Part shown: in pieces, positions 23,070 through 63,991 of the stretch
Layout of the letters: each line of letters starts with the position of its first letter
Numbering within the stretch: position 1 is the stretch's first letter
IMG/VR virus record: IMGVR_UViG_3300025012_000026
Span: 163,248-227,247 of that record
Direction: 5' to 3' (one strand)
DNA length: 64,000 nucleotides
Made by a program: the position numbers and the translations under genes
Notes under the pieces: generated by a model
Told to the model about the DNA's origin: nothing
What the model saw: only the letters and a program-made list of their open reading frames with translations
Databases searched by the model: none

Positions 23070-24779
23070 TTATTTCAAAACTCTCGCTCTAATTTCTGCT
23101 AAACTTTCATCTCTTACTAATTTTCCATCAATAAATACATCTTCAAGTAAATCAATAATATCAATTGCATCTTTTTCCATTTCATTTAATCCATCAACCA
23201 AATAGATACCATTTTCACCATCAACTACTGCAACCATTCCTTTTTGAGATTTTTTGATTCCACCAATATCGGTTTTAGGATCTTTAAAGATAAACTTTTC
23301 AACTCCATCAATAACCGTATAAGTGGCCTTTAAAGCGAACGAAAATGTGTCTCTGGTGTGATAACCTAAAGAATAACTTCCAACTCCGTATACGATGTTT
23401 TCTGCTGAAAACCCCTTTGCTTCTAATTGTTTGAAAGTTTCTTCTGCAATTTCTGGACTTATGCTATCTCCATATATTAAGCCCACATGACTATCTAGTA
23501 CCTTATACCCTTTACTATTAATAGTTCCTCCAAAGGTATCCCATAATGCTTCTACAGAACCCTTTTGCTCTATAGTTAATTTTACTTCTTTACAAATATG
23601 AACATTAGCACCATCAATATAATAATATTGTTTATCATGTCTATTCCAATCAATTTCAATAACAATTTCATAATGCTTATCTTGAAATTTAAAAATTGCA
23701 TCTTGCCTAGAAATACCATGTTCTCCATGAGGTGTATCATTTCTTATATCGTCAATTATTCTCTCCAACATAATTTCCTTGCAATCTTCCAGATTATCAC
23801 AATATTCTTCATTGGTTAAATCTTCAACAATCACATTACCGCAAATAATCTTTATTGGACTTCCAGAATCAGGACGAATGACACACTTACCATTTCTACT
23901 CATAATATCATCTTTCAATGAAGGTAAAATATTCCCCAAGACATTAAAATAATCATACCCATCACTAACTATACTTACAATTCCACTAGGGGCAACTTCA
24001 GTAATCATTCTCTTAAAATATCTCAAATCATCTTGATATCCACATTGAATACTATGTTCCGTTGCTAACACACTTGCTGAAACTAATTCCTTTTCCACAT
24101 TAACACCATAATATTGCTCTAAATATTGAATACTTGGAATCGTATCACTACCAGTAAAATATAATAAATGTCCTGCTCCTGTAGTTACTGCATCTTCATG
24201 ACCACTCATACCTCTATAACTAAAATTATGACATTGCCATTGAATATGATCTTTACTATCACATGTTTTCTCAGCCCACTTTTCACAAATGTCTCTATAT
24301 TTCTTTACAATTGTTGTTGCAGTAATTACTTTCCACATATTTGCGGAAATCAATGTCTCTAAGAAATTAGTCAACCAATAGAACTCTTTTTTAGTATTTT
24401 CAATTGTAAACACAGGAACTTTCATTGGAATCAATGTGCCTTCTTTTACTGCCTTGATTTTAATAGGAAGGTATCCTAAATCATGTAATGCTTCAATATG
24501 AGTTGTATCTGCACAATTATCTCCTAGAGAATTTTTAATGATTCTTTTATAATCTGCAACTACTATTGATTTATCAACATTGAAAAAGTTTTCATTGAAA
24601 TTATCAATTAGATAATCTTTAATAAATCCTTGTAAACCAAAGAATACTACTTCATTAATTCCTTCAATTCTTGAATGTCTAGGCGTAAATGTAGAATAAA
24701 TTTTTTCTGTACCTTTTTCACTCATAATGAGGTGGCTTATTTTGTACGAATCTGTCATTAACATTGGATTTGTTTTCAT
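23070..24779 (-). CDS. Nicotinamide phosphoribosyltransferase-like (Namat-like in NARP1 context)
   Basis: TDSYKISH, FFGLQ, HNFSYRG, ATEHS, SIVSDGYD, VIRPDSG, GLIYGDSI, KDPKTD..KKSQKG. Confidence 0.92.
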   Translation of the reverse strand: MKTNPMLMTDSYKISHLIMSEKGTEKIYSTFTPRHSRIEGINEVVFFGLQGFIKDYLIDNFNENFFNVDKSIVVADYKRIIKNSLGDNCADTTHIEALHDLGYLPIKIKAVKEGTLIPMKVPVFTIENTKKEFYWLTNFLETLISANMWKVITATTIVKKYRDICEKWAEKTCDSKDHIQWQCHNFSYRGMSGHEDAVTTGAGHLLYFTGSDTIPSIQYLEQYYGVNVEKELVSASVLATEHSIQCGYQDDLRYFKRMITEVAPSGIVSIVSDGYDYFNVLGNILPSLKDDIMSRNGKCVIRPDSGSPIKIICGNVIVEDLTNEEYCDNLEDCKEIMLERIIDDIRNDTPHGEHGISRQDAIFKFQDKHYEIVIEIDWNRHDKQYYYIDGANVHICKEVKLTIEQKGSVEALWDTFGGTINSKGYKVLDSHVGLIYGDSISPEIAEETFKQLEAKGFSAENIVYGVGSYSLGYHTRDTFSFALKATYTVIDGVEKFIFKDPKTDIGGIKKSQKGMVAVVDGENGIYLVDGLNEMEKDAIDIIDLLEDVFIDGKLVRDESLAEIRARVLK

Positions 24780-24780
24780 A

Positions 24781-25281
24781 TTATTTTACCTCTTTCTTAT
24801 TCATATTATTTAAATACTCAGCAACTTCTTCTAACGATTTAAAATACATTCCACCATTTCTTTCTACTATTAATCCGACCTGATTTAAAGATTTCATTTC
24901 TCCAATTGAAAAATTAATCTTATCATTTGGATAATTAATTTTATCTATAAACATATTAATATCAGGACTTCCAAGATAGCACATTGGATTTGGTACTTGT
25001 GTAATTATTGGAACTTCAGAATTTAATATACAAAATATAGTTTTTCCAGGACGTTTGTTGCTATCATCTATAACTTCTGCAATACTATAGACTCCACTCA
25101 TAGACGGAGTAATTACATATAAACAATAATCACATGTTTCACGTTGTCTACGCTCTTCTATCATACATTCTTCAGTCCAATCCTCTACAACTGGATTAAA
25201 ATAGTTAATATTAAGCATTGGAATTAATTTGTCTCTCCATATACTATTATTACAAGTACCGCCAAGGAATACTTTACTCAT
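24781..25281 (-). CDS. Nucleoside 2-deoxyribosyltransferase-like protein
   Basis: VFLGGTCNNSIWR..YFNPVVEDW..GVYSIAE. Confidence 0.75.
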   Translation of the reverse strand: MSKVFLGGTCNNSIWRDKLIPMLNINYFNPVVEDWTEECMIEERRQRETCDYCLYVITPSMSGVYSIAEVIDDSNKRPGKTIFCILNSEVPIITQVPNPMCYLGSPDINMFIDKINYPNDKINFSIGEMKSLNQVGLIVERNGGMYFKSLEEVAEYLNNMNKKEVK

Positions 25282-25284
25282 GAC

Positions 25285-26109
25285 TTAATTACCTTCTTTC
25301 ATAATTTTATATACTTCAATTTTATCATTTAATGATTCATTCATAATAGTATCTGTAGTGAAAACTTTATCAATCAAGTCTGTTTTAAATACATCGCCTT
25401 TGTAAATTGATTCCTCGCAATGTCCAACAACAAGATAAATTTCAGAAGCTCCAAGTTCTTTAAGTTGTTTTGCACCAAGCAAAAATGTTCCTCCATAACT
25501 TGATAAGTCATCCAACATTATTACTTTAAATCCTTTTTTCTTAACATCTCCAAAAACTTGAAGACTAGTAATTTTACCTGTTTGAAAATCTCTATGTTTA
25601 AATCCAACTAATTGATTTGGAACGCCAATCATTTTACTATAACGTTTCTCACTCGAAGCATCTGGGAAATAAACATAATCAGTATCATCATTGAAATTAA
25701 TTTTGTCTTTAATATCATAAAAAATATCTACAGATAGGAATCTACTTTTACAATTATTTAATAATGCAGGAGTTACATCAGAATGTGGTTCCAATACATG
25801 AATATAATCAAACCCTAAATTATTAATAAATTCTGCAATATATTTTAGTGTAAATGCTGAACCTCCTTCCGATCTATCCATTCTACTGTATGGCATGTAC
25901 ATGATATGTAGATTACAATTTATTTTTAATTGGTCTAGATATTTCTTTAAGAACAATAGTTTAATCAAGTCTGCATCTGATTGATACTTAAATGTAGTTA
26001 ACGAATTATTAACACCTCCTAAAATCTCATTAATTTGTTGTTCATTGAGTTTTGTTTCCCCATTTGGGAATGTAGTAAAATCTAATAGTTTGTTATTTAA
26101 CCAAATCAT
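25285..26109 (-). CDS. Ribose-phosphate pyrophosphokinase-like (Adps-like)
   Basis: FPNGE, YMPYSRMDR, EPHS, FPDASSEKRY, KHRDFQTG, LDDLSSYGGTF; start MIWLNNK after RBS. Confidence 0.9.
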   Translation of the reverse strand: MIWLNNKLLDFTTFPNGETKLNEQQINEILGGVNNSLTTFKYQSDADLIKLLFLKKYLDQLKINCNLHIMYMPYSRMDRSEGGSAFTLKYIAEFINNLGFDYIHVLEPHSDVTPALLNNCKSRFLSVDIFYDIKDKINFNDDTDYVYFPDASSEKRYSKMIGVPNQLVGFKHRDFQTGKITSLQVFGDVKKKGFKVIMLDDLSSYGGTFLLGAKQLKELGASEIYLVVGHCEESIYKGDVFKTDLIDKVFTTDTIMNESLNDKIEVYKIMKEGN

Positions 26110-26205
26110 TTTGTTTCCTCCTGAAATATTTATTTCTATATTCATACTACCACAATTTAGCATAATAAGTCAAGTTTAATTTAAACATCCTTTAAAATTT
26201 GATTT

Positions 26206-26538
26206 TCAATCTAATTCTTCAAAACTAATTTTAATCCTCATTTTCTTTTGAATTTTATGTCTATATATTTCTTCATTGTCAAGATACATTTCTGAAAAAA
26301 TACTATTGGGATAAACCATTAATTTGCCTCCAATAAATTTCCCATCTTTATGCGAATATTTTCCACCAATATAATCCATAATCTCATCTGGTACTTCATT
26401 CGTTGCCTTCATAAAATTCTCTTCATCTACTTCCCAACAAAAACATTCTCCATCTCCTGTGGGCTTACCTATAAATTCAACTGATTTCTTCATACTAACC
26501 TCTCCTTTACACCAATAATAACTTATAAACCATAGCAT
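26206..26538 (-). CDS. Hypothetical protein (likely start MKKSVEF)
   Basis: ORF with RBS AAAGGAGAGG. Confidence 0.55.
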   Translation of the reverse strand: MLWFISYYWCKGEVSMKKSVEFIGKPTGDGECFCWEVDEENFMKATNEVPDEIMDYIGGKYSHKDGKFIGGKLMVYPNSIFSEMYLDNEEIYRHKIQKKMRIKISFEELD

Positions 26539-26596
26539 AAATCATCACCATTACAAACATAATCAACTGTCCCTTAATTTTTTAAAGATTTATAAA

Positions 26597-26684
26597 TACT
26601 TAACTCAAAATACCTAACTTAACACAACTCATCGCAACTTAACTCAAACCAACATATCTAAACCAAACCCAAAATGCTTATCTT
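26597..26684 (-). ncRNA. Second block of the pentamer-module array: one full 60-nt unit (26611-26670) plus two partial units
   Basis: Plus strand aaaa|tacct aactt aacac aactc atcgc aactt aactc aaacc aacat atcta aacca aaccc|aaaa; same grammar as 27189-27564. Confidence 0.75.
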
Positions 26685-26686
26685 AA

Positions 26687-27151
26687 TCAAAAACTATTAC
26701 TTAATACCAATTTACTCTTCTTTTTATTTAACAATTTTAATTCTGTACATCCTCCAGCAAGCATAGCATGAAGTGTTTTTGCTCTATCAGAAACATGCCT
26801 AAATGCCTCCAATCCCTCTTTTGACATTTCATTAACAGGAGCATATTGTAATACTTGATACCCTTTATCAATCTTATTAAAACCACTCTTAATATGTTTT
26901 AAAGACATATCAGTATATTCATCTGGATTAACAATTGAATATCCTTGACCTGCTAAGGATTTAATAGTTTTACTTGATTCAAGTAATTTCTTTTTTGTTT
27001 TACCAATAATAGAATAATATTTAGGTGTATTTTGACTTTCTTTAATAACCTCTTCAATTTCACTATGTAATATCGTAGTGTCATAATCCATTTTTACAAT
27101 ATACTCAAATAGTAATTCCCATTTTTCTTTTTTATTTACTAATTCATTCAT
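26687..27151 (-). CDS. Accessory protein embedded in the array locus (possible winged helix plus helical region)
   Basis: Flanked on both sides by array units; TIKSLAGQGYSIV resembles a wHTH wing. Confidence 0.65.
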   Translation of the reverse strand: MNELVNKKEKWELLFEYIVKMDYDTTILHSEIEEVIKESQNTPKYYSIIGKTKKKLLESSKTIKSLAGQGYSIVNPDEYTDMSLKHIKSGFNKIDKGYQVLQYAPVNEMSKEGLEAFRHVSDRAKTLHAMLAGGCTELKLLNKKKSKLVLSNSF

Positions 27152-27188
27152 TCTTATATCTCCTTTATTATTCTTATTTTGCCCATAA

Positions 27189-27564
27189 TGCCTATCAAAT
27201 CACAGCGTATCGTACCTCAACGAAACCCATCTCAACACAACTGATCCTAAAATGCCTAACAAAACCAAACTCATCACATTCAAGACGCAACTGAACATAT
27301 CTAATCATATCCCAACTTAAAATACATAACAGAACTTATCCCATCCAATCATAACGCAACAGAGCGAAACTGAACCTAAAATACTCATCAAAGCATATCC
27401 AAACCCACCCAAACCCTACTCAACGAAACTGAACATATATTGCTCAACTTAACTCGGCCAAACTTATCATAACGCATTTTATCTCGACGTAACGTAGCAT
27501 ATATTGCTTAACTTATCGTAGCTTGCCCTATCCCATCTTAACTCGCCCCAACCCAACAGAACCT
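27189..27564 (-). ncRNA. Putative guide-RNA array: six 55-66 nt units of (NN + GTT/GAT/GCT) pentamers separated by TTTT/ATAT linkers (VIPR-like)
   Basis: Strict 5-nt periodicity; no ORF >=60 aa; begins 12 nt after the stop of the Cas7-like gene; each unit ends GCA/GTA. Confidence 0.8.
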
Positions 27565-27576
27565 AAAAATCATATC

Positions 27577-28155
27577 TTACTCTACTTCTTCGACTACAGC
27601 TACAAACTGTCCATACTTAGGTCTACTATCACACAGTCCTACATATTTCCCTGCAAAATCAATGCTTTGAATTACAGCTTCTAGATCAATTTGAGACTCT
27701 TCATAATTTACAAAGAATGTAACTTGCCATGTGTCAAATCTTGCTCTAGTTCTTAAAATTGAAGCATTATTTACTTTCATAACTCTAACATCTCTATACT
27801 TTAAATCTGCTTTCAATTGTTCTTTGGTAAGATTTTCACCATATGCAAAAGGTATGTATAACGGTTCAACTGATAAGAATTTCTGAATAGCTGTGCCTTT
27901 CTTAATAGACTTAGCTCCATTTCTAATTGTGGCCTCTACATTTTCTGCTGGCATAAAAGTTCCCATATTATCCTTCCAATACAGACCACATTCCCATTCT
28001 AAGTCTGCAATCATTTCATGATCTTCGTCAGTTTTTGTTCTCTTACCCGTATATTTCTTTAGTTCCTTAGTTAGAGGATGAAGTGGGTTAACTCCTTGGT
28101 TTGAGTGCATAATTAATGGGGTAATACCTTTCCATGTAACTTTAAGTTTTTTCAT
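27577..28155 (-). CDS. Stand-alone Cas7/RAMP-like protein (Vipr-like)
   Basis: RAMP-like motifs: LKVTWKGITPLIMH, FMPAENVEATIR, RTRARFDTWQVTF, C-terminal Gly-rich loop AGKYVGLCDSRPKYGQF. Confidence 0.75.
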   Translation of the reverse strand: MKKLKVTWKGITPLIMHSNQGVNPLHPLTKELKKYTGKRTKTDEDHEMIADLEWECGLYWKDNMGTFMPAENVEATIRNGAKSIKKGTAIQKFLSVEPLYIPFAYGENLTKEQLKADLKYRDVRVMKVNNASILRTRARFDTWQVTFFVNYEESQIDLEAVIQSIDFAGKYVGLCDSRPKYGQFVAVVEEVE

Positions 28156-28201
28156 TTTTAAACTCCCTCTTTCTTTTTAATTATTTATTTCTTACAAGTA
28201 A

Positions 28202-28230
28202 ATAATAACATGTTTATAGTAATTTGTCAA
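28202..28230 (-). promoter_or_regulatory. sigmaA promoter for the RAMP gene and array
   Basis: TTGACA-17-TATTAT with extended TG. Confidence 0.75.
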
Positions 28231-28441
28231 TAATTATTTATTGATTTAAGCTCGATAAAATATTTTTTTTAACTTATAAGACTTCTTCCTGCTTTATACA
28301 TTATGAATCCACCTATTGATACAACAATTGCGAATACAAAAACATTTATATTTGAATAACATATAAAATATGATCCACCAAAAGACAAAACAAAACCTAT
28401 AATTATAAATAATAATAATTTAAAAAATATCTCCCACAAAC

Positions 28442-28756
28442 CTAACTCTCCCTCTCTTTAGGATTCTCCCAATCCAAAAATTCCTTCTCTGCTCTTTCTC
28501 TACAATCAGGACAAAACCCTCTACCCATTCCATCAGTACATAAATGAGCATTACCATCTTTACCACAATACCAACATAGATAAAAACTATTTTGTTTAGA
28601 GGGATGCCAAGGACTCTCTATGCTTCCTTCTTCAATGAAAAGATGTCCACATTCATTTTCAAATTCCTCATCAGTCATATTTTCAAAATGATCTGCAACT
28701 AATTTTAATTTATCTTCCATTGTTAATTGCAATGATTCTTCATCTGTCAATTCCAT
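28442..28756 (-). CDS. Hypothetical protein with C-terminal Zn finger
   Basis: CWYCG..FCPDC. Confidence 0.55.
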   Translation of the reverse strand: MELTDEESLQLTMEDKLKLVADHFENMTDEEFENECGHLFIEEGSIESPWHPSKQNSFYLCWYCGKDGNAHLCTDGMGRGFCPDCRERAEKEFLDWENPKERES

Positions 28757-61850: not shown

Positions 61851-63991
61851 TTAATGATATTTTTCTGATGCAATAGAAGAATCAATATTCATTCCCTTAA
61901 TTTTATCTTTCCATTTTTTAACCTCTTCATTATTTAGATATCCCGTATTAAGACATTCTCCGTCTACAAACAATGCTCTTCCAGACCTAAACAATTTGTT
62001 ATACTTAATATGATCATTGACATATTCATCCCTAACAATATTTACTACATGACTCCCATTTGCATAAACTCCTACAGAAATATGATTCACAATAATCATC
62101 CTCCATTTATTAAACTAATTTATGCTTCAACAAAAACTTGATTTGCTTATCCGTCAAAGTATCAATATCTAAATCTATAATTCTTTCATCACTACCTAAT
62201 TTTACCCAACCTAAGACTTCCAACAATCTTTCTGCACACCAAGGATGAGTATTGGTTAAGGGATCGATGATATTAAAACTAATCTCATTCCAATCTGCTA
62301 TTTCTTCAGCCTTTTTATAATGAGAAAGCAAATTGAAAGTGCTGTAAAATTTACCTTCAGGGGATAACCAACCGTTCATTAATTCACTCTCCTTTGGATT
62401 TAATTTAGTAACCAATACTATGATATAAACCCACAAACCCATATGCTCTGCTGTTATAGCGAATATGGGCTTAAATCACTAGCACAGATTAATAATAACC
62501 ATAGAATCCCATAAGGTAATTGTTATACATTTTGTTAAGATCGTCTGATGTAACCAAATTGCCTGAAAGTGTTTGAAAATATTCTTTCTTTGTTAGTGGT
62601 TTCTTTTCAACTTTATACTCGTTCATTTTAAATTAACTCCTTTCTTCACTCCGTTAAGTTTTACTTTTTATAGACTCTCTCCGCAAGCAGGACAAAAGAA
62701 CTCTACTTCACCTGATTCTAGGTTAATGTTCATTTCAAAATTTTCAAAACTAGTTTTACAGTTTGGGCATACCACTTTTGTCATATTATTGCACCTCCTA
62801 TTTTTTGATACCACCTAGCAGGATTGTTATGAACCCTGCTAACGCTCTGAGCTTAAGGCGTTTTATACTGGATCAGACCAGTTAATTTATTCCTTCCAAT
62901 AATTAACCCAAGCTAACTTTATAGAATCAACTGTTGAATTACTATCAACTACTACATTAAAACCATTAAAAATGCCTCCAATGGAGAAATCATTTCTTTG
63001 ATTTCTTTTAACCATTCTGTCCCATATTTCAAACAATCTTTCCACATACTCAATAAAAGATTCCATGTCAAATGGTTCAAATGTTCTTGCTAACATATTA
63101 ATACACTCTCCCTTAATTTAATTCTGCTTTCTAGTAAGCTTGCTTTCATGCTAATTTTCTTATGTCAATACTTCAATTCCAAATCCACCATCTAATGCTT
63201 CTATAACTTCTTCTAAACTATCACATTCAAGACTGTCCCAACCTTCAAGTCCTCTATCATCATCCATTAATATTAGGTATTTAATTACTTTGTCTACTGG
63301 TATTTTATCAATAATATCTTTTCTTTGATGTCTGTCGTTAACCTCATACTTTTTATCAGTCTTTTCTGAGAGGAAATCAATAAAAGCATATTTATCAATC
63401 TTTTCTCTCTCGATTAGCCATTTACCCTGTTCCTGGTCATACTCACTGTTATATCCCTCTAACACTCTACTAATCCAAAAGTCATTGGTATCCATACATA
63501 TAAATAACTTCTTATAGTAGTCTTTTGCATAGGAGAATAATTCACCTTTATCAATTAGTTGATTCATTTTACTTGTAACATCATAATATTTTGCAAATTT
63601 CATTTTATCATTTCCTTTCTAATTTAGAATAAGTTAAATAATAGACTTATGGGATAATTACCTATACCACTTCACAATTGACAAATAAAATCCAAATCCA
63701 TAAATATATTGATCACCATTTACAATTGCTTGCTTGAATTTATAAACCACGACAATATGCCTCCAATTCTTCAATTTGTTTTACGTGCTCATTGTAAACA
63801 TAATCAATATCAATAAAAGTATTTGAATCATATAGGCTAAAATCATAATTCTTCAAATGTGCTTTTGTTAATCCATCTAATAATATTTCAATCGCTTGAA
63901 CATCCTTATCCATTATAGCATTGTGAAGTTCATTGTTATACATAGAACGATATAGAATATACTCATTTTTAGACTGTAAACCACTTTGCAT
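61851..63991 (-). other. Small hypothetical ORFs (61851-62099, 62110-62442, 62887-63096, 63160-63603, 63740-63991)
   Basis: ORF track and RBSs. Confidence 0.55.

What the first reader, a model, noticed from the sequence alone, without database searches (positions are those of the whole stretch)
26597..27151. Accessory gene embedded inside the guide array
Seen: a 154-aa ORF splits the array. It is followed by a partial unit (26675-26684), a full unit, and another partial unit (26597-26606), so it is likely on the same transcript. Inference: it is a dedicated partner (effector, regulator or processing factor); SLAGQGYSIV looks like a winged-helix wing. The partial units may be scars of unit gain or loss by recombination between pentamers.
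Basis: partly seen in the sequence, partly recalled or inferred. Interest (0 to 1): 0.65.

Follow-up and report, generated by a model that had tools for sequence, protein, structure and literature searches.

The report
Vap1 accessory gene inside VIPR array
The 154-aa gene is a distant member of the Vap1 family, the winged-helix accessory protein of the recently described phage VIPR RNA-guided DNA-silencing systems; here it sits in the middle of the guide-RNA array instead of directly next to the RAMP gene, so it is a real but already explained feature.

Summary
ORF 26687-27151 (minus strand, 154 aa, strong ribosome-binding site) interrupts a pentamer-periodic array found nowhere else in the window. 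There are seven units between the RAMP gene (27577-28155) and the ORF, then one full 11-pentamer unit with delimiter copies after it.

The locus is a VIPR system (bioRxiv 10.64898/2026.04.26.720920). The RAMP protein is a Vipr: a profile of it hits the solved SUSP1 Vipr at E 4.6e-44 and its model has a Cas7-like fold. The ORF belongs to the Vap1 family. It matches phrog_5926, to which SUSP1 Vap1 belongs, and a family profile aligns to SUSP1 Vap1 at 96% probability.

Every homologue with enough flank lies next to a vipr gene, and the two proteins diverge together (r 0.95). Under the published one-base-skip rule, two guides match phage genes exactly and in frame, one of them a capsid gene.

Three things differ from SUSP1: the fixed trinucleotide is G-(T/A)-T rather than GGY, the delimiters are 9 nt with no structured tail, and vap lies after or inside the array.

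How Vap1 works is unknown. I infer a DNA-binding cofactor of the Vipr filament. This is a new member of a known kind, of modest interest.

The parts
28202..28230 (-). Sigma-70-like promoter candidate upstream of vipr (TTGACA, 17 nt, TG-extended TATTAT)
   Evidence: 11 of 12 consensus matches, the best site in 26000-28600. This is a consensus match only; its function is not shown.
27577..28155 (-). vipr: 192-aa Cas7-like RAMP protein, the filament-forming RNA-binding subunit of VIPR
   Evidence: phrog_4652 at E 1.8e-49. 32% identity to SUSP1 Vipr at E 1e-32. Profile A3 hits PDB 36pp 'SUSP1 Vipr protein' at E 4.6e-44. AF2 model pLDDT 91.8. The top 36 structural matches are all CRISPR RAMPs, best Csm3 9g9a_D at Z 10.3.
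27152..27576 (-). vrRNA array, segment 1. Leading delimiter 27571->27563. Units: U1 27562->27508, U2 27498->27444, U3 27434->27385, U4 27375->27326, short U5 27316->27307, U6 27296->27256 (1-nt slip), U7 27246->27192. Each is closed by a 9-10-nt delimiter. The last 31 nt carry the vap ribosome-binding site.
   Evidence: Searches give the layout, the periodicity and the consensus G-(T/A)-T-N-N. U2 and U7 have exact in-frame one-base-skip matches in phage genes. The RNA is no more structured than shuffles (z +1.58).
26687..27151 (-). vap (Vap1 family): 154-aa protein with an N-terminal winged helix (about residues 7-75; wing = I63-I73, including SLAGQGYSIV) and a C-terminal antiparallel helical hairpin (76-151)
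   Evidence: for homology to SUSP1 Vap1 / phrog_5926. for the fold. for dN/dS of 0.03-0.35. for linkage and co-divergence with vipr.
26669..26682 (-).
   Evidence: Every relative with units after vap has such a delimiter within about 20 nt of the vap stop.
26614..26668 (-). vrRNA unit U8: 11 pentamers, one of them (TTTGA) lacking the G
   Evidence: It is conserved in sister phage L017 with changes only in the variable dinucleotides of two pentamers. No target was found.
26591..26613 (-).
   Evidence: L017 lacks 10 nt here, i.e. one delimiter.

Best explanation
The ORF is the vap gene of a VIPR (Viral Interference Programmable Repeat) system carried by a large AT-rich phage.

Shown by comparison:
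- The neighbouring 192-aa protein is a Vipr.
- The G-periodic intergenic tracts are vrRNA guide units.
- The 154-aa protein is a divergent Vap1: a winged helix followed by a long helical hairpin.

Known from the literature for SUSP1:
- Vipr protomers coat the vrRNA, one per pentamer. They hide the fixed trinucleotide and expose the NN dinucleotides.
- The NN dinucleotides pair with double-stranded DNA while skipping every third base, and this silences transcription of rival phages or satellites.
- Vap1 enhances this silencing, and deleting it gives the same 10^4-fold plaquing loss on satellite lysogens as deleting vipr.

Inferred for this locus:
- One transcript runs from the promoter upstream of vipr through vipr, seven guide units, vap and one more guide unit.
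- The 9-nt delimiters mark the unit boundaries, so the vap message is bracketed by delimiter copies.
- Vap1, probably as a dimer through its helical hairpin, binds DNA at or beside the Vipr-vrRNA-DNA complex and makes silencing effective.

The biochemical role of Vap1 is not established anywhere.
For: Vipr identity: (PDB 36pp SUSP1 Vipr, E 4.6e-44).

Vap1 identity:
- SUSP1 Vap1 matches phrog_5926 at E 1.1e-75.
- The ORF hits phrog_5926 at E 1.1e-5.
- 90 of 105 members of its family hit phrog_5926.
- hhalign of the family against SUSP1 Vap1 gives 96% probability, E 4.6e-9, and aligns the G-x-G-Y-x-V-V-x-P wing.
- The family HMM hits the gene next to vipr in SUSP1, MakoManhole, Trine, Medea1 and LittleE at E 2.4e-17 to 7.5e-12.
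- The best viral structure matches are Gordonia phage Trine (267 aa, the length of gp40, the gene next to its vipr) and Escherichia phage adrianh (146 aa).

Linkage:
- 8 metagenome loci (counting L012/L013 once), 14 IMG/VR loci, 7 Vipr-anchored loci and 2 distant loci all pair the two genes.
- Pairwise identities of Vipr and Vap correlate at r 0.95 over 23 loci.
- Both genes are under purifying selection.

Array function: the variable positions 4-5 have 1.9 bits of entropy. Under the one-base-skip rule, U7 matches 9 contigs and U2 matches 10. Every match is in frame, with the skipped base at the codon wobble position.

Literature: 10.64898/2026.04.26.720920, 10.64898/2026.04.26.720927, 10.64898/2026.10.15.759431.
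Against: - Direct pairwise similarity to SUSP1 Vap1 is marginal (E 0.034). The assignment rests on profiles, fold and gene context.
- The co-fold of Vipr with Vap gave no verdict, so direct contact is untested.
- Transcript structure, vrRNA processing and DNA binding by this Vap are not shown.
- No target was found for the unit after vap or for two others.
- The fixed trinucleotide and the tail-less delimiters differ from the characterised type II systems. The type could not be assigned because the paper's supplementary data are not held.
Confidence: 0.8

Rival explanations
1. The protein is a winged-helix transcription factor that regulates the VIPR operon itself, or other phage genes, rather than acting at vrRNA-specified targets.
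For: The fold resembles repressor-type winged helices: PurR N-domain at Z 7.5, and OmpR-type, GntR and MarR hits. In published assays vipr plus one vrRNA are sufficient for reporter silencing without vap1.
Against: The sequence upstream of vipr is not conserved between relatives beyond generic promoter elements, so no shared operator is visible. In SUSP1, deleting vap1 gives the same 10^4-fold plaquing loss on satellite lysogens as deleting vipr, and vap1 enhances defence when supplied in trans from a separate plasmid. Tight co-divergence with Vipr fits a physical or functional partner better than a generic regulator, although linked genes share history anyway.
Confidence: 0.12
2. The protein is a vrRNA maturation or loading factor. 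It would recognise the short delimiters, define the ends of units, or cap Vipr filaments, standing in for the structured 3' tail of SUSP1-type vrRNAs.
For: In this clade the tail is only a 9-nt delimiter and the array RNA has no excess structure. The gene lies inside the array and is bracketed by delimiter copies. Some winged helices bind RNA (general knowledge).
Against: Vap1 is also present in SUSP1-type loci with long pseudoknotted tails, and in loci where it precedes vipr, so it is not specific to tail-less arrays. SUSP1 vrRNA co-purifies with Vipr expressed without vap1.
Confidence: 0.07
3. The ORF is an unrelated small phage gene (a moron) that happened to insert into the array.
For: It has no Pfam or NCBIfam match, and tblastn finds nothing in GenBank phages.
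Against: All examined homologues with usable flank are next to vipr, while the surrounding genes differ from locus to locus. There is also profile homology to Vap1.
Confidence: 0.01

Closest known systems
SUSP1 / Pseudomonas fulva prophage VIPR systems with vap1 (type II VIPR; bioRxiv 10.64898/2026.04.26.720920, .720927 and 10.64898/2026.10.15.759431)
   Same: - A homologous Vipr RAMP and a homologous Vap1 (phrog_5926).
- Guide RNAs built of about 10-12 pentamers, each with three fixed and two variable bases.
- Guides that follow the one-base-skip rule, with the skipped base at codon wobble positions.
- Targets in other phage-like elements.
- Phage-borne.
   Different: - The fixed trinucleotide is G-(T/A)-T instead of GGY.
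- Units are packed head to tail and separated by 9-nt delimiters, instead of each carrying a roughly 50-60-nt structured tail.
- vap is separated from vipr by 187-581 nt of array in all 17 loci of this clade, against -8 to +14 nt in the five GenBank phages examined.
- Vipr is only 29-32% identical to SUSP1's, depending on the alignment. Vap is about 16% identical.
Non-canonical VIPR arrays (WGT/NN, TGH/NN, GAC/NN ...) reported in bioRxiv 10.64898/2026.10.21.760802
   Same: 5-nt periodic arrays of about 10 repeats next to Vipr-like folds, with a fixed trinucleotide other than GGY.
   Different: I could not verify that G-(T/A)-T/NN is among the listed motifs, because only examples are given in the text held. 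A distant relative found here (L072) does look like TGH/NN.
Class 1 CRISPR-Cas backbone (Cas7) with crRNA, and its small or accessory subunits
   Same: A RAMP protein polymerises on a guide RNA, and periodic bases are excluded from pairing. Fold similarity to Csm3, Cmr4 and type VII Cas7 is Z 9-10.
   Different: - The period is 5 nt with 2 pairing bases, against 6 nt with 5 pairing bases.
- There are no 20-40-nt repeats and no CRISPR-type spacers.
- None of the five flanking ORFs scanned against Pfam has a Cas-family match.
- The accessory protein is a winged helix, not a Cas11-like subunit.

Membership tests
VIPR system | Vipr protein homologous to the characterised SUSP1 Vipr | tested here: met
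   Profile A3 hits PDB 36pp 'SUSP1 Vipr protein' at E 4.6e-44. BLASTP gives 32% identity at E 1e-32. phrog_4652 matches both proteins.
VIPR system | Minimal RAMP (Cas7-like) fold | tested here: met
   AF2 pLDDT 91.8. VIA top 36 hits are all CRISPR RAMPs, Z 10.3-6.2. Foldseek gives 68 hits at E <= 1e-3; the 50 listed are all Csm3, Cmr4 or type VII Cas7.
VIPR system | Adjacent non-coding tracts of tandem pentamers with a fixed trinucleotide and hypervariable NN (GGY/NN or a related consensus) | tested here: met
   Lag-5 G periodicity of 0.60 and 0.58 against a background of 0.14, with 0 of 5000 shuffles reaching it. The consensus is G / T60% A27% / T92% / N / N, with 1.9 bits at positions 4-5 over 579 pentamers. 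This is a variant trinucleotide; relatives with 32-41% identical Vap carry canonical GGYNN.
VIPR system | Guides match natural DNA targets under the one-base-skip rule, with the skipped base at the codon wobble position | tested here: met
   U7 gives 9 exact matches of 20 specified bases, all in frame in an SU10-type major capsid gene. U2 gives 10, all in frame in a phrog_8308 gene. U3, U4 and U8 gave none; U1 gave one doubtful hit.
VIPR system | Invariant structured 3' tail on each vrRNA (type II, SUSP1 clade) | tested here: not met
   Only 9-nt delimiters separate the units. The array RNA folds no better than shuffles: z +1.58 and +0.41. The paper states that architectures vary between types, so this argues against the SUSP1 subtype, not against VIPR.
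VIPR system | vrRNAs are expressed, co-purify with Vipr, and direct DNA binding or silencing | not testable with these tools
   This needs small-RNA sequencing, pull-down and reporter assays.
Vap1 (phrog_5926) | Sequence homology to SUSP1 Vap1 | tested here: met
   phrog_5926: SUSP1 Vap1 at E 1.1e-75, the ORF at E 1.1e-5, and 90 of 105 family members. hhalign gives 96% probability, E 4.6e-9. The family HMM hits SUSP1 Vap1 at E 2.7e-12. Pairwise BLASTP alone is marginal at E 0.034.
Vap1 (phrog_5926) | Encoded in the VIPR locus next to vipr | tested here: met
   All loci with usable flank meet this. The order is vipr-array-vap in this clade, vipr-vap in the GenBank phages, and vap-vipr in L027 and L072.
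Vap1 (phrog_5926) | Predicted winged-helix-like DNA-binding fold | tested here: met
   AF2 pLDDT 95, topology H-S-H-H-S-S followed by two long helices. PurR N-domain Z 7.5, rmsd 2.2 over 66 residues; NsrR Z 7.3. Foldseek top hits are OmpR-type, GntR and MarR domains, at weak E-values of 0.015 and above.
Vap1 (phrog_5926) | Required for, or enhances, VIPR-mediated silencing | not testable with these tools
   Shown for SUSP1 only.
CRISPR-Cas (considered) | Array of 20-50-nt direct repeats with unique spacers, plus cas genes | tested here: not met
   Tandem Repeats Finder and the manual layout show 5-nt periodic units with 9-nt delimiters. The five flanking ORFs scanned against Pfam have no Cas-family match.

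The most novel reading that the evidence does not exclude
In this clade the vap gene has moved into the array and is bracketed by delimiter copies. The vap message would then be released from the same precursor by the same cuts that release the vrRNAs, which would tie Vap1 dosage to guide maturation. More boldly, Vap1 itself might read the short delimiter and cap or terminate Vipr filaments, taking over the job of the pseudoknotted tail that these compact arrays lack.
Probability: 0.1. Interest if true: 0.6.

Novelty: new member of a known kind. Interest (0 to 1): 0.3.

Why it matters
VIPR was described only in 2026, and what its accessory proteins do is an explicitly open question. This locus adds a well-populated, divergent Vap1 lineage: 214 clusters at 50% identity, in AT-rich phages and prophage-like elements.

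The lineage keeps the same wing motif but has a different gene order, a different fixed trinucleotide and tail-less compact arrays. These natural variants show which features of Vap1 and of the vrRNA are essential. The invariant G70, Y71 and P76 of the wing are obvious mutagenesis targets.

The variants also give small, easily cloned test systems with predicted natural targets.

Tried and rejected
- tblastn of the ORF against GenBank phages found nothing. Pfam and NCBIfam gave nothing significant. The relationship appears only with profiles.
No census of cellular genomes was therefore made.
- The Vipr + Vap co-fold gave no verdict, with ipSAE 0.00 in both runs. This is neither evidence for nor against binding.
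- Target searches for U3, U4 and U8 (20 specified bases) found nothing in IMG/VR, and U8 found nothing in the metagenome collection.
- Relaxed U8 patterns (16-18 specified bases) gave 6 and 5 scattered hits in unrelated genes. Only three were in frame (two of them the same sequence) and several were GC-rich, so I treat them as chance. They also show what chance hits look like next to the coherent U2 and U7 results.
- The U1 hit (two identical contigs, GC 0.42-0.44, not in frame, lying over a ribosome-binding site and start codon) is left as doubtful.
- No guide matches the window itself.
- Other guides do not converge on the fetched parts of the U2 and U7 target contigs.
- No conserved operator was found upstream of vipr.
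- The whole-model structure search for Vap is dominated by generic coiled-coil matches to the C-terminal hairpin. These say nothing about function.
- Early ideas rejected: a TRAP-like 11-mer binding site (11 repeats of 5 nt), because the protein is a Cas7-like RAMP and not a TRAP fold; and a CRISPR mini-array or RNA anti-CRISPR, because there are no CRISPR-type repeats.
- The VIPR type (I-VII) could not be assigned, because the paper's supplementary tables are not held.

Full report
**What is there.**

All genes in 20-34 kb lie on the minus strand. The ORF at 26687-27151 encodes 154 aa and has a strong Shine-Dalgarno sequence. The non-coding DNA on both sides of it has a G every fifth base on the minus strand.

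- The lag-5 statistic is 0.60 in 27576->27152 and 0.58 in 26686->26591.
- The window-wide background is 0.14 +/- 0.07, and no shuffle out of 5000 reaches these values.
- No other place in the 64 kb shows the signal.

Laid out in register, the upstream tract has several parts:

- a delimiter directly after the stop codon of the 192-aa gene;
- units of 10-11 pentamers, each closed by a 9-nt delimiter (consensus GCATTTTRR);
- one 2-pentamer remnant and one unit with a 1-nt slip;
- finally the ribosome-binding site of the ORF.

After the ORF the array restarts: one pentamer plus a delimiter, a full 11-pentamer unit (26668->26614), a delimiter, one more pentamer and a degenerate delimiter.

**What the system is.**

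A literature search led to the 2026 description of VIPR systems (10.64898/2026.04.26.720920). These are phage-borne loci with three components:

- a minimal RAMP protein, Vipr;
- an accessory gene, vap;
- vrRNAs made of tandem pentamers, in which a fixed trinucleotide (GGY or a related consensus) alternates with a hypervariable NN.

The NN dinucleotides read double-stranded DNA while skipping every third base.

The 192-aa protein here is a Vipr.

- It matches phrog_4652 at E 1.8e-49.
- tblastn finds 130 GenBank phages, including SUSP1.
- It is 32% identical to SUSP1 Vipr.
- A profile of its family hits the solved 'SUSP1 Vipr protein' (PDB 36pp) at E 4.6e-44.
- Its AF2 model (pLDDT 91.8) superposes on Csm3, Cmr4, Cas7-11 and type VII Cas7. 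The 36 best matches are all CRISPR RAMPs, with Z up to 10.3.

**What the ORF is.**

In SUSP1 the gene directly after vipr is vap1. It matches phrog_5926 at E 1.1e-75. The window ORF relates to that family as follows.

- It hits the same PHROG at E 1.1e-5 over residues 48-121.
- An exhaustive search finds 214 clusters of relatives, nearly all about 150 aa long.
- 90 of 105 aligned relatives hit phrog_5926 and no other family.
- The family profile aligns to SUSP1 Vap1 at 96% probability, E 4.6e-9. The match is centred on the conserved G-x-G-Y-x-V-V-x-P motif.
- The family HMM picks out the gene next to vipr in SUSP1, MakoManhole, Trine, Medea1 and LittleE.

The AF2 model (pLDDT 95) has two parts.

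- The first is a helix-strand-helix-helix-strand-strand winged helix.
- The second is a pair of long antiparallel helices (76-102 and 111-151).

The N-terminal domain matches winged-helix DNA-binding domains. PurR gives Z 7.5 with rmsd 2.2 over 66 residues. NsrR gives Z 7.3. Foldseek returns OmpR-type, GntR and MarR hits at weak E-values. The hairpin gives only generic coiled-coil matches.

Among predicted viral structures the best matches are a 267-aa Gordonia phage Trine protein and a 146-aa Escherichia phage adrianh protein. The Trine protein has the length of gp40, the gene next to Trine's vipr.

The gene is under purifying selection, with dN/dS of 0.03-0.35. It evolves faster than vipr, whose dN/dS is 0-0.08.

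I looked at the surroundings of homologues found in four independent ways.

- Close Vap homologues from metagenomes gave 8 loci (counting the identical pair L012/L013 once), each in a different gene neighbourhood.
- Vap homologues in IMG/VR gave 14 loci with 32-100% identity.
- Loci anchored on a 64%-identical Vipr gave 7.
- Distant Vap homologues of 25-29% identity gave 2 usable loci, plus one 832-bp contig too short to judge.

Every usable locus pairs the two genes. Pairwise identities of Vipr and Vap correlate at r 0.95 over 23 loci. Linked genes share history, so this shows co-inheritance rather than co-evolution in the strict sense.

Gene order splits cleanly by clade.

- In the window's broad clade (Vipr at least 45% identical, 17 loci), 187-581 nt of array lie between vipr and vap.
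- In 9 of the 16 distinct relatives of that clade whose downstream region was laid out, guide units also follow vap.
- In the five GenBank phages the two genes abut, with a gap of -8 to +14 nt.
- Two loci have the order vap-vipr-array.

**Are the units real guides?**

Over 579 pentamers from 13 loci of the close clade the consensus is G / T 60%, A 27% / T 92% / N / N. Positions 4-5 have 1.9 bits of entropy. More distant relatives carry canonical GGYNN with the same compact layout.

I applied the published rule, joining positions 4-5 of successive pentamers with one free base.

- The first ten dinucleotides of U7 match 9 IMG/VR contigs exactly. Every match is in frame on the peptide QVEGSETTVF of an SU10-type major capsid protein (PF17236 at E 4e-75), with the skipped base at the wobble position.
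- U2 matches 10 contigs, all in frame on TTENAMKWEK of a 900-1000-aa phrog_8308 protein. One of these contigs comes from the same sample as a sister VIPR phage.
- In both cases the eleventh pentamer does not match. The pentamer next to the delimiter is biased to GTTRR, so it is probably handle rather than guide.
- Three other guides, including the one after vap, gave no exact match. Relaxed patterns gave only scattered hits in unrelated genes.

The array RNA has no excess secondary structure (z +1.58 and +0.41). The long pseudoknotted tail of SUSP1 vrRNAs is therefore absent here.

Between the window and sister phage L017 the Vipr proteins are 100% identical and the Vap proteins 97%. The vipr-proximal guides cannot be aligned at all. 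The unit after vap is conserved except for two variable dinucleotides and a 10-nt indel that removes one delimiter.

**How it most likely works.**

Established for SUSP1 and P. fulva:

- Vipr protomers polymerise on the vrRNA, one per pentamer.
- The complex captures double-stranded DNA in an R-loop triplex and blocks transcription.
- Vap1 enhances defence, and a vap1 deletion gives the same 10^4-fold plaquing loss as a vipr deletion when SUSP1 meets its satellite.
- The authors state that the role of the accessory genes is unclear.

Inferred here:

- The cassette is one transcription unit. There is a strong promoter-like site at 28230->28202 and no terminator-like site through 26000.
- The delimiters bound the units, and the vap message is bracketed by them.
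- Vap acts as a DNA-binding cofactor of the filament, probably as a dimer.

The co-fold of Vipr with Vap gave no verdict. No operator-like conservation lies upstream of vipr, which weighs mildly against a purely autoregulatory role.

**Novelty.**

The kind of system and the accessory family are published, so this is a new member of a known kind. Several points are not stated in the text I could read:

- the G-(T/A)-T fixed trinucleotide (other non-canonical motifs are reported);
- the compact tail-less array with 9-nt delimiters;
- the placement of vap1 after or inside the array across a whole clade;
- capsid-gene targeting.

The paper's type classification could not be applied because its supplementary data are not held.

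Noticed in passing
window 27192-27246 (U7) and 27444-27498 (U2), minus strand; targets in L031-L039 and L042-L051: Under the one-base-skip rule, U7 matches an SU10-type major capsid gene (peptide QVEGSETTVF) in 9 small AT-rich viral contigs. U2 matches a 900-1000-aa phrog_8308 gene (peptide TTENAMKWEK) in 10 contigs. All matches are in frame, with the skipped base at the wobble position. One target contig (L046) is from sample 3300024999, the same sample as sister VIPR phage L017.
   Followed up: partly
window 27152-27576 compared with L017:2610-3000: The Vipr proteins are 100% identical and the Vap proteins 97% identical, yet the guides between them cannot be aligned. The array turns over much faster than its genes. 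The unit after vap is the conserved one.
   Followed up: partly
L019, L021, L022, L023 (IMG/VR); L072:3587-3960: Relatives with 32-41% identical Vap use canonical GGYNN pentamers in the same compact layout, with delimiters such as GGATTATAA. L072 has the order vap-vipr-array and pentamers that look like the TGH/NN motif reported elsewhere.
   Followed up: partly
window 23070-26163, minus strand: Just downstream of the VIPR cassette lie three genes: a 569-aa ORF that I read by eye as NAMPT-like (no family search was run on it), a nucleoside 2-deoxyribosyltransferase-like gene (PF15891) and a PRPP-synthetase-like gene (PF14572). From memory this resembles phage NAD+ reconstitution (anti-defence) modules.
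   Followed up: no
window 62809-62882, minus strand: Pistol ribozyme (RF02679), 55.3 bits against a gathering score of 34.5. It is the only Rfam hit in the window, and no tRNA was found.
   Followed up: no
L005:3279-3764: In one relative the vipr gene is called as only 161 aa and lacks the N-terminal 31 residues. This may be a miscalled start or a truncated gene.
   Followed up: no
window 26206-26538, minus strand: The ORF after the array is listed from an ATG at 26538. It more likely starts at the ATG near 26493, which follows AAAGGAGAGG. It has no family match.
   Followed up: no
window 27297-27316, minus strand: A 2-pentamer remnant (GTTGG GATAT) followed by a 10-nt delimiter-like GATTAGATAT sits between U4 and U6, and U6 carries a 1-nt slip. 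These look like internal scars of unit loss or slippage.
   Followed up: no
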